A stretch of 64,000 bases of DNA, from assembly GCA_013416795.1 (NCBI GenBank), contig RQSC01000027.1, positions 395,911-459,910 on the forward strand. The letters are read 5' to 3'. Position 1 is the first letter of the stretch. Each line of letters opens with the position of its first letter. Below, in pieces: positions 51,849 to 55,719 of the stretch. Position numbers and translations under genes: made by a program. Origin of the DNA: Prasinococcaceae sp. CCMP 1430 (Eukaryota; Plantae; Prasinodermophyta). The notes beneath the pieces were generated by a model. It ran no database searches. It saw nothing but the letters and a program-made list of their open reading frames with translations, and was not told the origin of the DNA.

Positions 51849-52759
51849 CGCACAACTCAAGGCGCGCCCGCCGAGCTGGCGGCCGGCGTCGGCGGGGCGC
51901 CCTCAGCGGCTGTGCGGACGCGCGCCCCCCAATCACCGCCCCGCCCACCCACCCACGCGCGCGCTCGCGGCTGCCGCNNNNNNNNNNNNNNNNNNNNNNN
52001 NNNNNNNNNNNNNNNNNNNNNNNNNNNNNNNNNNNNNNNNNNNNNNNNNNNNNNNNNNNNNNNNNNNNNNNNNNNNNNNNNNNNNNNNNNNNNNNNNNNN
52101 NNNNNNNNNNNNNNNNNNNNNNNNNNNNNNNNNNNNNNNNNNNNNNNNNNNNNNNNNNNNNNNNNNNNNNNNNNNNNNNNNNNNNNNNNNNNNNNNNNNN
52201 NNNNNNNNNNNNNNNNNNNNNNNNNNNNNNNNNNNNNNNNNNNNNNNNNNNNNNNNNNNNNNNNNNNNNNNNNNNNNNNNNNNNNNNNNNNNNNNNNNNN
52301 NNNNNNNNNNNNNNNNNNNNNNNNNNNNNNNNNNTCGCGCGCGCGCGCGCCCCTGATGGACGGGCTGGGCTCTCTGGCCGGCGCGCGATCCACTCCGCCG
52401 GCTGGGGCCCCTGCGGCTCCGCGGGCCCGCGCGCGCGCGCGCAAACGGACGGGCATCAAAGCATAAAAAAGAAAAAAAGAGGTGTGGGTTGCGGGGATGA
52501 GAATTCGGAGGCGGTGCGAAACCGGCGGGCGTCGCGCGCGGCGCAAGGCGACCCGATGGCCTCGGCCGGGGGGAAGCCGGGGCGAAAGCGGGGGCGTTTT
52601 TTTTTGCCGTTGTTGGCCGGCGCGCGCGCGCTGCGCCTCCCAAAGTCCCCCTCCCCCCACCGCGCGCGCGCGCGGGGCAGNGGCACTATGAAGCACGCGC
52701 GGGGTCGGGTGTGCAGGTGGGCACAGGCTAGTGCGGCACGCCAGCCCTCCCGCGCGCGC

Positions 52760-53049
52760 GCCCGTCGAGTACTCGCACAGCGCACCTTGGGCGCCCGCCC
52801 GCGGAACACGTCCCAACACTTGATGGAGCCCCCACCACAGCCATACACGGTGCGGCCGTCAGCGGAGAGCGCCAGCGAGCCGCTGGCCGAGGAATGCGCC
52901 TCCGCGCCCTCATAGTGGACGTGGGCGTGGCGGCCGCTCCACAGGTCCCACAGCCGGAGGGAGGCATCGCCTCCAGTGCTGCACGCGCGAGGTAGCGCGT
53001 TAGCGTGGATGCTCACACTACGCGGCGCGGTCCCTCCGGGAAGCGGCAT
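52760..53049 (-). CDS. WD40-repeat gene fragment
   Basis: STGGDASLRLWDL and LALSADGRTVYGCGGGSIKCWDV; lies next to a gap, boundaries uncertain. Confidence 0.55.
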
Positions 53050-53064
53050 CGCAAGGCCGCGCAC

Positions 53065-54300
53065 ATGCCCACCACCTCCGAGACGTTCTCGGCGGGCACG
53101 CCCGAGCAGCTCCTGAGCTCGCGCAGGCTGCCCGCTCGCCCCAGCGGCATCGAGCTGCGCAAGGGCATGCCGAGCATCAACGTCAACGCCAGCACGGGCA
53201 ACGCCGTCGCCAGCCCCAAGCGCCACGTGCCGGGGGGGCGCGCGGGGGACGCGGCGGCGGCGGCGCCGAGGGCGAGCATGAACGGCAAAGCGGTCGTCGC
53301 GGCGACGGTGGAGGCCGGCGGCGCGGGCCCGCTGGCCGAGCTGGCCAAGTTCGTGCGCGAGCACGAGGAGAACCTGCGAGGGCGCATGCCATCGCGCTCG
53401 TACCTGAGCGACTACGGCCGCAAGGACCTGATGAGAATCGTGCGCCGGCACGGCGGCCCGCAGGCCGTTGCGGACGTGCTGGGGCTCGTGTGGGAGGGAG
53501 AGATCGACGAGCAGCCGGAGCACGCGCTCGGGTGCGACGGCGGGCAGGATGTGGAGCAGAGCTCGCCTGAGAGGGACGCTCTCTGCGCTGCCGTGTGGTC
53601 CACGTGGGACGAGGCGCACGTCAAAGCGTGGCGCGACGCGGGCTCGCCGGAGTGGGCAGGGCCGGGGATGGCATCCAAGGAGCGCGCGCCCGTAGCGCCC
53701 GTGGATGTGCCCGACTGGGTGCGTGGCGCCCCCGGCCAGCCCGCCGGCGCCCCCGGGGCCGCCGGCGACGCGCCCGAGGGCGCGCACGCGCAGGCGCACA
53801 AGATGCCGCTGCCAGAGGGGCTGCGCAAGCGCCTGCAGTCGTTCATGGATCGGAACGTGCTGTTCCTGGTCGAACACCACAGAACTGCCCGCGAGGATGA
53901 CAGGTACTGGGTGCTGTGGCGCCTGCCTCAGACGGGAGGCAACCTGGACGACGTGCTCAAAGAGGCGGACGCTTGCTCGCGCCAACACCCGCACCACTAC
54001 GTGCGCGTGACGGCCTTCGACAACGAGGCGCAGCTGGCGCAGTTCTCGGCGGTGCTCTACGCGCCCTCGGACAGCGACAAGAGCTCGACCTCTTCGGCAC
54101 GGGGCCGCCGCCGCGAAGCTTCGCAGCCGAGCATGGCCAAGATGAACCGAGATGCGGAGGAGGCGTACTCCCACAGACTAAAAAGCCACGCCACGAACGC
54201 CGAGCCTGGCGGTGTGCAGCGATGGCGCCTCAAGCAGCTGGAGGCCACCGTGCGTAGGGCAGCCCACGAAGGTGCCAATGACGCGGACCCGCGCTTCTGA
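53065..54300 (+). CDS. Uncharacterised protein with PTST-like helical motif and a Rubisco small subunit-like domain (53809-54066)
   Basis: MPSRSYLSDYGRKDLMRIVRRHGGPQAVADVLGL; VEH..RYWVLWRLP..DDVLKEADACSRQHPHHYVRVTAFDNEAQ..SAVLYAP. Confidence 0.75.
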   Translation: MPTTSETFSAGTPEQLLSSRRLPARPSGIELRKGMPSINVNASTGNAVASPKRHVPGGRAGDAAAAAPRASMNGKAVVAATVEAGGAGPLAELAKFVREHEENLRGRMPSRSYLSDYGRKDLMRIVRRHGGPQAVADVLGLVWEGEIDEQPEHALGCDGGQDVEQSSPERDALCAAVWSTWDEAHVKAWRDAGSPEWAGPGMASKERAPVAPVDVPDWVRGAPGQPAGAPGAAGDAPEGAHAQAHKMPLPEGLRKRLQSFMDRNVLFLVEHHRTAREDDRYWVLWRLPQTGGNLDDVLKEADACSRQHPHHYVRVTAFDNEAQLAQFSAVLYAPSDSDKSSTSSARGRRREASQPSMAKMNRDAEEAYSHRLKSHATNAEPGGVQRWRLKQLEATVRRAAHEGANDADPRF

Positions 54301-54614
54301 TGCCAGCCCCGGCCATCGCCAGGGCTGCGAAACGACACACCGTAGGCGCCACACGCGGTTTGCATTTCCTCGCATGCACGCTCAGCACGCGGAGCCAGAC
54401 GGGGAGGGCGGTGCAGTGGTGGTAGCCCTCCCGCGGCACTCCGTGGGACGCCTACAATGCCCCGTCACCGCACAAACACCGACAATAAATGGTGACACTT
54501 TTGATATCTTTTCTGTTCACATCTCGCGCGACGATCTCCCGAGACCGCGCAGCTCGTCGCCATTGTGAGGGTGCCGGTCACGCGGCGAAGCTTCCGCACG
54601 GCACTTCTCGCGCC

Positions 54615-55506
54615 TCAGATGTCATCTGCCAGCGGCAGCGAGACCTTCTCCCCCGGTGCGAACTTGGGCATTCCCCAGTATGGGCAAGTCTCACAGCGGA
54701 AGGCGTCGCCGAGCCCACAGTTGCCGCAAGCCGACTGAGGATTGTTCACCATCTCGTCAGTGAGCTCGACCTTGACGCCCTTCGCCTGCGCCTCCTCGCG
54801 CTCCTGCGTGCACGGGCACGCGCGTTAGCGGCACGGTCTCGTTCTACTGCGCATGACTCCCTCCACAGGCGTCTCGCGGGCGCGCACGCGATTGGCCGTG
54901 CGCGCGCGAGCGCAGACGCGAAGCACACGGCGCCCGTTCCTACCTTGCGGCCGCAACTGCAGTTTGCGCACGCAGTGCGTTTCGTAGCGCAACCCGACGC
55001 TGCCGCGTCTGCCACGGCCTCGTTACGAACGGCGTCATCCTCCCCCGCAACGACGCCGAGGAGGTCGGCATCGTTCAGCAGAACGGGCGTGCCGGGCGCG
55101 CCATTGAATGCGCTGGCGGCCGCGGCGAATGCCGCTGCGCCGCCAGCGGGCGCAGCAACGGGCTCGGCCGCCTCGACCACCTTGCGCGTCTTCAGCGAGA
55201 AGGCCGCCCCCGTGCTCCAGGAGGGCTTCTCTGCCACCACCACATTCACGGCCGCGCCGCCCTCGAGCGGATACGCCGCGCCGGCGCCACCGACGTGCGT
55301 GGCCTGCGAGAAGCCGCCGACGAGCGCGGCCTTCGTGAGCGCATCCACTGGCGTGCCCGCGGCAAGCAAGAGCTTCCCGCCGGGCTGCAGCGCGCGGGAG
55401 AACTCTGCGAGTTCAGCCGCCGCGAACGCACCGCGGGTGGCGACCGCCACGACGGCCGCCGCGCCGCCGTCGGCTACGCCCGCCGCCGCGGCCGTCGTCG
55501 CCAGCC
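54615..55506 (-). CDS. DRE2: Anamorsin/Dre2 Fe-S assembly protein; intron 54804-54943; 5' in gap
   Basis: [60 protein letters not shown]. Confidence 0.92.
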
Positions 55507-55719
55507 NNNNNNNNNNNNNNNNNNNNNNNNNNNNNNNNNNNNNNNNNNNNNNNNNNNNNNNNNNNNNNNNNNNNNNNNNNNNNNNNNNNNNNNNNNNNNN
55601 NNNNNNNNNNNNNNNNNNNNNNNNNNNNNNNNNNNNNNNNNNNNNNNNNNNNNNNNNNNNNNNNNNNNNNNNNNNNNNNNNNNNNNNNNNNNNNNNNNNN
55701 NNNNNNNNNNNNNNNNNNN

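What the first reader, a model, noticed from the sequence alone, without database searches (positions are those of the whole stretch)
53065..54300. Rubisco-small-subunit-like domain fused to a PTST-like motif: candidate Rubisco/pyrenoid-starch linker
Seen: a ~410-aa ORF whose residues at 53809-54066 carry the RbcS signature (YWxxWxLP, VLxExxAC, P..YVRxxAFDN..Q..S), preceded by ~250 aa of unrelated sequence including MPS..L..YGRKDL..VRRHGG..VA..LGL (~53386-53487) and followed by a helical tail. The betaA-betaB loop is short (VEHHRTAREDDRYW). Established: green-algal RbcS has a long loop, bacterial RbcS/CbbS has a short one, and RbcS-like modules in larger proteins (cyanobacterial CcmM, some Rubisco activases) bind or condense Rubisco. 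From memory, the MPS..GR.DL motif resembles the N-terminal region of PTST2/3 starch-granule proteins. Inference: a eukaryotic SSUL-type adaptor tying Rubisco to starch or organising the pyrenoid, unlike the EPYC1/SAGA solution. I know of no described example. Caveat: no clear transit peptide, and the 5' end may be incomplete.
Basis: partly seen in the sequence, partly recalled or inferred. Interest (0 to 1): 0.85.

Follow-up and report, generated by a model that had tools for sequence, protein, structure and literature searches.

The report
Rubisco-small-subunit domain fused to PTST-type unit
A marine green alga expresses an intronless gene that joins the small helical unit found at the start of the plant starch proteins PTST2/3 to a stripped-down copy of the Rubisco small subunit; the same two-part protein occurs in deep branches of the green lineage, has not been described in the papers searched, and most likely docks Rubisco to an unknown partner rather than to starch.

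Summary
Window 53065-54300 (+) is a 411-aa ORF that appears in marine metatranscriptomes without any splice. Residues 249-336 are a true RuBisCO_small domain (Pfam E 1e-14) with an RbcS fold and the short bacterial-type betaA-betaB loop. Residues 88-146 form a confident helical unit. The same unit stands at the N-terminus of Arabidopsis PTST2 and PTST3, though I judged that by eye from a published alignment. It also occurs 3-13 times in many metagenomic proteins and is distantly related to Pfam HNH_repeat, a helix-turn-helix-like module.

The unit-plus-SSU architecture is conserved in Prasinoderma, Chlorokybus, a pedinophyte and several marine metagenome lineages, so it is an old green-lineage family. 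The SSU domain keeps the YWxLWxLP and VRxxAFD regions of RbcS, which CcmM-type SSULs have lost, but it lacks the ETxSYLP N-terminal arm.

The starch reading is not supported. There is no carbohydrate-binding module, and only one SSU domain, so the protein cannot cross-link Rubisco by itself. My best reading, at about 0.4, is a monovalent plastid adaptor that docks Rubisco or RbcL8 through the SSU domain and reaches a partner through the PTST-type unit. Rubisco binding and plastid location remain untested; one complex prediction gave no verdict.

The parts
53024..54407 (+). Minimum transcribed span seen in marine metatranscriptome contigs. No splice joint falls inside the ORF. RNA contigs leave a gap at 53755-53844, in GC-rich low-complexity sequence.
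   Evidence: table 8. X15 pieces lie at 53024-53615 and 53875-54407; X16 pieces lie at 53078-53270, 53245-53404, 53397-53754, 53845-54022 and 54022-54373. Table 5 shows no joint within the ORF supported by a long side. The upstream intergenic region and the neighbouring gene's intron are not covered, so this is RNA and not carried-over DNA.
53065..54300 (+). Intronless ORF of 411 aa, stop codon included, from the first ATG after the in-frame stop at 52993-52995.
   Evidence: A full-length orthologue, P0002 (Prasinoderma, 438 aa, 44-49% identity), was found. A natural variant contig, L003, is 99.1% identical and colinear.
53065..53325 (+). N-terminal region, aa 1-87, rich in Ala/Ser/Arg/Gly/Pro and poor in acidic residues, predicted disordered. 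Its composition is like a transit peptide, but targeting was not tested.
   Evidence: pLDDT is below 50 for aa 1-72. Composition was counted for this and other family members.
53326..53502 (+). PTST-type helical unit, aa 88-146: five short helices, helix-turn-helix-like, a distant relative of Pfam HNH_repeat (PF18780).
   Evidence: pLDDT is above 90. The unit is repeated 3-13 times in more than 100 other proteins. hhalign against a genuine PF18780 unit gives probability 97.8%, E 8e-13. The same unit is seen at the N-terminus of PTST3 and PTST2 in a published alignment and in AMPK1_CBM and START proteins by shape.
53503..53808 (+). Acidic, Ala/Gly/Pro-rich linker, aa 147-248, mostly disordered. 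It carries Trp-containing short motifs (SPEWAGP, VPDWVRG) that are conserved only with the Prasinoderma orthologue.
   Evidence: The non-synonymous natural variants cluster here (aa 225, 227, 228, 247).
53809..54072 (+). RbcS-derived domain, aa 249-336. It has helix A, a short betaA-betaB loop, the YWVLWRLP motif, helix B and the VRVTAFDN motif, and it lacks the ETxSYLP part of the RbcS N-terminal arm.
   Evidence: Pfam PF00101 E 9.7e-15, matching profile positions 15-96 of 97; PDB sequence hits; Foldseek; alignment A3; tree.
54073..54297 (+). Basic C-terminal tail, aa 337-411, with two predicted helices (aa 356-376 and 383-405). A comparable tail is present in the Prasinoderma orthologue; the Chlorokybus and MMETSP (P0013) members carry longer tails of different sequence; the other members end just after the SSU domain.
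   Evidence: pLDDT 50-69; alignment A1.

Best explanation
This is an expressed, intronless nuclear gene of a prasinodermophyte green alga. It encodes a two-module adaptor that belongs to an old green-lineage family.

Module 1 (aa 88-146) is the helical unit that also opens PTST2 and PTST3. By shape it also occurs in chloroplast-type START proteins. It is a distant relative of the HNH_repeat helix-turn-helix-like unit.

Module 2 (aa 249-336) is derived from the Rubisco small subunit. It keeps two of the three conserved RbcS regions that contact RbcL but has lost the N-terminal arm.

The most likely working is as follows. After import into the plastid, the SSU-like domain docks on Rubisco, either at a vacant or exchangeable small-subunit site on the RbcL8 core or beside it. 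The PTST-type unit binds a second partner, which may be a protein as inferred for PTST2/3, or nucleic acid as the unit's prokaryotic relatives suggest. The protein would then place or hold Rubisco, or an assembly intermediate, at a defined site. With only one SSU domain it cannot cross-link Rubisco by itself.

Shown here: the ORF, its transcription without splicing, both folds, conservation of the family, and the sequence features. Inferred: plastid location, Rubisco binding, the binding site, and the identity of the unit's partner.
For: - The RbcS domain is real.
- It retains YWxLWxLP and VRxxAFD, with E, H, W, C, P, R and D invariant across ten family members. A CcmM-type SSUL (P0032) has lost the first motif.
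- The architecture of one unit plus one SSU domain recurs in Prasinoderma, Chlorokybus atmophyticus, Pedinophyceae sp. YPF-701, an MMETSP transcriptome and several marine metagenome clusters. Their SSU domains form one supported clade, 99/91.
- The gene is transcribed in the sea without splicing, in runs where the neighbouring gene is spliced.
- Natural variants are synonymous inside the two domains, apart from one Ala-to-Thr change, and non-synonymous in the linker.
- The unit is shared with plastid proteins that carry a different cargo-binding domain: CBM48 in PTST2/3 and START.
- N-termini across the family have transit-peptide-like composition.
Against: - There is no direct evidence of Rubisco binding. 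The one complex prediction, with cyanobacterial RbcL, gave no verdict (score 0.02).
- The ETxSYLP arm is missing. From memory of mutational work on Anabaena RbcS, this arm matters for assembly, which argues against tight binding at the canonical site.
- Plastid targeting was not tested. The basic C-terminal tails of three members could equally be nuclear signals.
- In multi-unit proteins the unit keeps company with DNA-acting enzymes such as SNF2, ResIII and Mrr, so a purely nucleic-acid role is possible.
- The match of the unit to PTST2/3 was judged by eye only.
Confidence: 0.4

Rival explanations
1. It is an alternative small subunit that is built into the L8S8 holoenzyme. Its appended parts (N-terminal unit, Trp motifs, C-terminal helices) would then sit eight-fold on the enzyme surface and make Rubisco particles stick together or to other structures, as the hornwort RbcS-STAR isoform does.
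For: The domain is much closer to true RbcS than to SSUL. The window protein, its Prasinoderma orthologue and the Chlorokybus member have predicted helices after the SSU domain. RbcS-STAR shows that an RbcS with a helical extension can condense Rubisco.
Against: The ETxSYLP arm is absent. A 250-aa extension precedes the domain. The tail is missing in most family members and is modelled at low confidence. There is no evidence of assembly (one search gave no verdict).
Confidence: 0.15
2. It is a nucleic-acid-binding factor coupled to Rubisco assembly state. The helix-turn-helix-like unit would bind plastid DNA or RNA. The SSU-like domain would read out free small-subunit sites on RbcL8, tethering Rubisco to nucleoids or feeding back on rbcL expression.
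For: The unit is related to HNH_repeat and gives weak hits to many HTH families. In multi-unit proteins it travels with SNF2, ResIII, Mrr, methyltransferase and transposase-type domains. The C-terminal tails are basic. Control of RbcL synthesis by assembly state is known in Chlamydomonas (paper listed, not read further).
Against: The fold matches to DNA-binding domains are weak (best Z 3.8, Foldseek E above 1). In PTST2/3 and START proteins the same unit sits in proteins with no known nucleic-acid role. No binding data exist.
Confidence: 0.2
3. One reading: a linker that ties Rubisco or the pyrenoid matrix to starch, or organises the pyrenoid.
For: It shares its N-terminal unit with the starch-initiation proteins PTST2/3. 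From memory, all named species with the family have pyrenoids.
Against: No carbohydrate-binding module is present, whereas PTST2/3 bind glucan through a C-terminal CBM48. There is only one SSU domain and no repeated sticker architecture. The shared unit has no known role in starch binding.
Confidence: 0.08
4. The SSU fold has been put to another use and the protein has nothing to do with Rubisco; for example, it could be a nuclear or cytosolic helix-turn-helix protein.
For: Targeting and binding are untested. Basic tails resembling nuclear signals occur in some members. The complex prediction gave no support (which is not evidence either way).
Against: The RbcS regions that contact RbcL are the most conserved parts of the domain across about ten divergent members. 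Every family member with a source name comes from a green alga, and the unnamed ones come from marine metagenomes. The unit is shared with plastid proteins.
Confidence: 0.15

Closest known systems
Rubisco small subunit (RbcS/CbbS, Pfam PF00101)
   Same: It has the same fold and clear sequence homology. The YWxMWKLP-type and VRxxGFD-type regions are kept. The loop length is that of bacterial form IA/IB small subunits.
   Different: It lacks the ETxSYLP N-terminal arm. It is embedded after about 250 residues that include another folded module. It forms its own clade. Whether that clade arose from the green RbcS or from a bacterial type is not resolved (AU test p 0.11).
SSUL modules of cyanobacterial CcmM and of the Rubisco-activase-like protein
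   Same: It is an RbcS-like module without the N-terminal arm and with a short loop, sitting inside a larger accessory protein. The idea that such a module grips Rubisco comes from these proteins.
   Different: There is one copy here, not 3-5. By sequence it is far from CcmM SSUL (E 0.44 against 1e-13 for RbcS; a branch of 2.8 changes per column separates CcmM-type repeats). It keeps the RbcS Trp motif that SSULs lost. It is eukaryotic and nuclear-encoded.
PTST2 and PTST3 (PROTEIN TARGETING TO STARCH 2/3; FLO6 in rice)
   Same: They share the N-terminal helical unit (pattern F..x..G.xPSxxxLxxxGRxDLxxIVxxxG) (by shape).
   Different: PTST2/3 continue with a coiled coil and a C-terminal CBM48 that binds glucan. 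This protein continues with an RbcS-like domain and has no CBM.
RbcS-STAR of the hornwort Anthoceros agrestis
   Same: It is a eukaryotic protein in which an RbcS fold carries extra parts, including helices after the fold.
   Different: [quoted passage not shown] Here the arm is missing, the main extension is N-terminal, and most family members have no tail.
Homing endonuclease associated repeat (Pfam PF18780, HNH_repeat)
   Same: The unit profile aligns with a genuine PF18780 unit at hhalign probability 97.8%. Seven of 57 multi-unit proteins reach PF18780. ESM Atlas matches by shape include PF18780 clusters.
   Different: The window's own unit does not reach PF18780 even at E 0.1. It occurs as a single copy next to an RbcS-like domain.

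Membership tests
RbcS (PF00101 RuBisCO_small) | Profile match above the curated cut-off | tested here: met
   54.8 bits against a cut-off of 27, E 9.7e-15.
RbcS (PF00101 RuBisCO_small) | Four-stranded sheet with two helices (the RbcS fold) | tested here: met
   The predicted elements are helix, strand, strand(s), helix, strand, strand. Foldseek puts RbcS chains first, TM by target up to 0.85.
RbcS (PF00101 RuBisCO_small) | N-terminal arm with the conserved ETxSYLP region that wraps onto RbcL | tested here: not met
   The profile match starts at position 15 of 97. In alignment A3 only an LP remnant aligns with the arm of four true RbcS sequences.
RbcS (PF00101 RuBisCO_small) | Assembles as eight copies on an RbcL8 core | tested here: inconclusive
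   The complex prediction with RBL_SYNP6 gave no verdict (score 0.02). An experiment is needed.
SSUL module (CcmM / activase-like protein) | RbcS-like fold without the arm and with a short loop, inside a larger protein | tested here: met
SSUL module (CcmM / activase-like protein) | Sequence kinship with known SSULs | tested here: not met
   CcmM chains score E 0.44 and 0.9, against 2.9e-13 for RbcS. CcmM-type repeats (P0032, P0070, P0097, P0134) lie across a 100/100 branch of length 2.8.
SSUL module (CcmM / activase-like protein) | Multivalency (tandem SSULs, or an oligomeric carrier) | tested here: not met
   There is one SSU domain in the ORF and in the whole window. Oligomerisation was not tested.
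PTST2/3 | C-terminal CBM48 (PF16561 AMPK1_CBM) | tested here: not met
   No Pfam family other than PF00101 is found at E<=1. The feature is defined.
PTST2/3 | N-terminal helical unit (PSxxxLxxxGRxDLxxIV) | tested here: inconclusive
   By eye it is present in AT5G03420 and AT1G27070 in the published alignment. PTST2 shows 5 of the 6 near-invariant columns of A2, and PTST3 shows 4. One match by shape to AMPK1_CBM proteins has TM 0.57.
HNH_repeat (PF18780) | Profile match above the curated cut-off | tested here: not met
   The window unit gives no hit at E<=0.1. The relationship shows only at profile-profile level.
Disordered repeat linkers (EPYC1, CsLinker type) | Several evenly spaced sticker motifs in a disordered chain | tested here: not met
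   There are two folded domains, each present once. The two Trp motifs in the linker are conserved only with the closest orthologue.

The most novel reading that the evidence does not exclude
The PTST-type unit is a shared address tag of the green plastid. Fused to CBM48 it brings glucan primers to one site or partner (PTST2/3). Fused to START it brings a lipid-binding domain. In this family it brings Rubisco, through a small-subunit-derived grip. That would make this the first eukaryotic protein that uses an RbcS-like module to hold Rubisco. It would date back to the common ancestor of green algae and plants, and it would link the placing of Rubisco to the machinery that places starch.
Probability: 0.2. 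Interest if true: 0.8.

Novelty: new variant of a known kind. Interest (0 to 1): 0.66.

Why it matters
RbcS-like modules that grip Rubisco are known only from cyanobacterial carboxysome proteins, and a 2024 paper states they are specific to cyanobacteria. A conserved nuclear-encoded version in Prasinodermophyta, Chlorophyta and an early streptophyte would widen that principle to eukaryotes. It would also offer a compact, folded Rubisco handle for pyrenoid and Rubisco engineering.

The finding also draws attention to the N-terminal unit of PTST2/3. The papers I searched do not describe it, yet it turns out to be a mobile module with many relatives. Knowing its partner would bear on how starch initiation is positioned. 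In lineages whose pyrenoid components are unknown, this gene is a concrete candidate to localise.

Tried and rejected
- **Word-index protein searches.** The search restricted to the motif and the search with the family profile returned only proteins already known, so they say nothing about wider distribution.
- **ESM Atlas feature searches on the unit**. These gave only scores below 0.9, which are leads and not evidence.
- **Foldseek and VIA-align on the unit alone**. They found no solved structure above background (best Z 3.8; helix-turn-helix, winged-helix, LOTUS and Slx4 CCD type folds), so no function can be read from the fold.
- **PDB profile search with the unit**. Nothing significant.
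- **Complex prediction of cyanobacterial RbcL with aa 205-340**. No verdict (score 0.02), which is evidence neither for nor against binding.
- **Origin of the SSU domain.** The free tree places the family beside short bacterial-type small subunits. The AU test does not reject a clade with Mamiellophyceae RbcS (p 0.11), so I make no claim on origin.
- **Splicing to a plain RbcS.** Rejected: RNA contigs show no joints in the ORF, and relatives have the same fused ORF.
- **Antisense 572-aa ORF at 52456-54174.** Rejected as coding over this stretch: the Pfam hit, the orthologue and the variant pattern all fit the + frame.
- **Ryan et al. 2019.** The paper could not be read because it is not held.

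Full report
**What is at the locus**

The window is GC-rich (0.60-0.71) and broken by runs of N, as in a draft eukaryotic assembly. At 53005-54300 on the + strand there is one open frame. An in-frame stop lies at 52993-52995 and the first ATG is at 53065, which gives 411 aa.

Pfam finds a single family, RuBisCO_small. It scores E 9.7e-15 and 54.8 bits against a cut-off of 27, covering profile positions 15-96 of 97. Solved RbcS chains match with E down to 2.9e-13, the best being bacterial and cyanobacterial, with no gap in the betaA-betaB loop. CcmM SSUL chains reach only E 0.44 and 0.9.

An AlphaFold model built on ten family members has two confident parts. One is a helical unit at aa 88-146. 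The other is an alpha/beta domain at aa 250-335. The rest of the chain is disordered, and two helices in the tail are modelled at low confidence. Foldseek puts RbcS chains first for this model.

**Is it one gene and is it expressed**

Contigs from three marine metatranscriptome runs tile 53024-53754 and 53845-54407. They are colinear with the genome and show no joint inside the ORF. In the same runs, the neighbouring minus-strand gene is spliced: 140 nt, 54803-54942, are skipped, with GT..AG ends on the minus strand. Its intron and the upstream spacer are not covered. These contigs therefore come from RNA of this organism.

No RNA contig bridges 53755-53844, a GC-rich low-complexity stretch where many stray contigs pile up. 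The frame stays open across that stretch, and relatives show the same fused ORF. The Prasinoderma orthologue lies whole on single contigs. One relative is an MMETSP transcript, and another is a Chlorokybus gene model.

A natural variant contig that is 99.1% identical, together with the RNA variants, shows a clear pattern. Changes inside the two domains are synonymous, apart from one Ala-to-Thr change. Changes in the linker and the N-terminal region are non-synonymous. The numbers are small, but they fit selection on the two domains.

**A family, not a one-off**

An exhaustive profile-free search found a full-length orthologue named Prasinoderma, with 44-49% identity. It also found about ten further clusters that carry both parts. 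Named members come from three sources:
- Chlorokybus atmophyticus, an early streptophyte;
- Pedinophyceae sp. YPF-701, a chlorophyte;
- Prasinoderma.

Other members come from an MMETSP transcriptome and from marine metagenome contigs up to 144 kb long.

Each member has one unit, a variable linker and one SSU domain. A C-terminal tail after the SSU domain is present only in some members. Ten residues are invariant in the unit and seven in the SSU domain. The SSU domains form one clade with 99/91 support.

Earlier notes of this scan call the genome Prasinoderma coloniale. I did not verify that beyond the name of the orthologue.

**The SSU-like domain**

I aligned the domain with true small subunits (Thiomargarita, two metagenomic sequences and Micromonas commoda) and with a CcmM-type repeat. 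Three things stand out:
- The family keeps the YWxLWxLP region and the C...P.HxVRxxAFD region.
- The family has the short bacterial loop; Micromonas RbcS has 17-18 more residues there.
- The family lacks the ETxSYLP part of the N-terminal arm, of which only an LP remnant aligns.

The CcmM-type repeat has lost the Trp motif as well. The domain therefore stands between RbcS and SSUL: it has no arm, like SSUL, but it keeps the core regions of RbcS.

From memory, mutational work on Anabaena RbcS named three conserved regions as needed for assembly. Two of the three are kept here. A published review notes that CcmM35 lacks key RbcS motifs and binds in a groove, not in the small-subunit site.

The origin of the domain is open. 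The free tree puts the family next to short bacterial-type subunits. A clade with Mamiellophyceae RbcS is not rejected (AU p 0.11).

**The N-terminal unit**

That unit is repeated 3-13 times in more than a hundred metagenomic proteins. Folded alone it gives pLDDT 87, as five short helices. No solved structure matches above background.

One multi-unit protein has a unit that is a genuine Pfam HNH_repeat (E 8e-22). That unit aligns with the unit profile at 97.8% probability. The window's own unit does not reach the Pfam model. In multi-unit proteins the unit occurs alongside HTH families and DNA-acting enzymes, including SNF2, ResIII, Mrr and methyltransferase domains.

A shape search of the ESM Atlas found the unit in three further kinds of protein:
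- green-lineage START (Polyketide_cyc) proteins;
- streptophyte AMPK1_CBM proteins (TM 0.57);
- HNH_repeat proteins.

The supplement of a potato PTST2 paper holds an alignment in which Arabidopsis PTST3 (AT5G03420, from about aa 56) and PTST2 (AT1G27070, from about aa 85) begin with this same pattern. They show the Phe, the Pro-Ser, the Leu, the Gly-Arg-x-Asp-Leu and the Ile-Val, and PTST2 also has the Gly-Gly. This was judged by eye. I did not type those sequences into a tool, so no score exists.

**What it probably does**

In PTST2/3 the defining parts are a coiled coil and a C-terminal CBM48. Neither a CBM nor any other family is found here, so nothing ties this protein to starch.

The pattern across proteins is one shared unit joined to different cargo-binding domains: CBM48, START and, here, an SSU-like domain. 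This suggests the unit is an anchor and the second domain is the grip. I therefore read the protein as a monovalent adaptor that docks Rubisco, or RbcL8 intermediates, and connects them to the unit's partner.

That partner is unknown. PTST2 depends on thylakoid-bound MFP1 for its placement, but which part of PTST2 is responsible is not stated there. The prokaryotic relatives of the unit point to nucleic acid instead.

The N-termini have transit-peptide-like composition, but targeting is untested. The single complex prediction, with cyanobacterial RbcL, gave no verdict.

**Known or new**

Searches of the held papers found no description of a eukaryotic RbcS-like domain protein. One paper states that such domains are specific to cyanobacteria. 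The nearest eukaryotic parallel is the hornwort RbcS-STAR, which is a complete small subunit with a self-associating tail.

Public databases hold the relatives only under automatic names. I file the finding as a new variant of a known kind: the known kind is an RbcS-like module in a Rubisco accessory protein. Function is unproven.

The scan has flagged other candidate Rubisco linkers in this genome. They are different genes and do not bear on this one.

Noticed in passing
window 54556-55135 (-), intron 54803-54942: The neighbouring minus-strand gene is spliced in two metatranscriptome runs, skipping 140 nt with GT..AG ends on the minus strand. Its first-exon ORF (54749-55450) has no Pfam hit. 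A CxxCxC stretch near the exon end resembles anamorsin-type motifs, from memory only.
   Followed up: partly
window 52741-53061 (-): A WD40-like reading frame lies on the minus strand, directly upstream of and head-to-head with the gene (Pfam WD40 26.5 bits, cut-off 27). The RNA runs do not cover it, and any upstream exons would have to lie inside or beyond the gene studied here. It is possibly a fragment or a silent gene.
   Followed up: partly
window 53503-53808 (+), aa 147-248: The otherwise disordered linker carries Trp-containing short motifs (SPEWAGP, VPDWVRG, and AWRDAG on a short predicted helix). They are conserved with the Prasinoderma orthologue at 44-49% overall identity and could be short binding motifs. 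They do not fit the Chlamydomonas Rubisco-binding motif exactly.
   Followed up: no
window 53733-53771: A GC-rich low-complexity stretch coding for Ala/Gly/Pro is shared with many other loci of this and other organisms. Stray contigs from all four runs pile up here, and both RNA and DNA assemblies break here.
   Followed up: no
P0210 (Micromonas commoda RbcS), C-terminus: After the SSU fold, the true small subunit of Micromonas commoda carries a Gly- and Pro-rich extension of about 40 residues ending in NYSW. This is worth a look in the light of RbcS-STAR-type extensions.
   Followed up: no
P0004, P0008, P0012, P0031 and about 100 other proteins: A large, unnamed class of metagenomic proteins consists of 3-13 tandem copies of the ~60-aa unit. 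Some also carry SNF2, ResIII, Mrr, methyltransferase or transposase-type domains. Only a minority of them reach Pfam HNH_repeat.
   Followed up: partly
P0032, P0070, P0097, P0134: Proteins with 4-5 tandem SSU-like domains of the CcmM type (Trp motif lost) turned up as distant hits. Two of them have no room for an N-terminal gamma-carbonic-anhydrase domain, because the first repeat starts at about aa 90.
   Followed up: no
window 51978-52334 and 55507-55719: Assembly gaps (runs of N) lie on both sides of the locus within 1.2 kb. Single N letters occur at 52681 and elsewhere.
   Followed up: no
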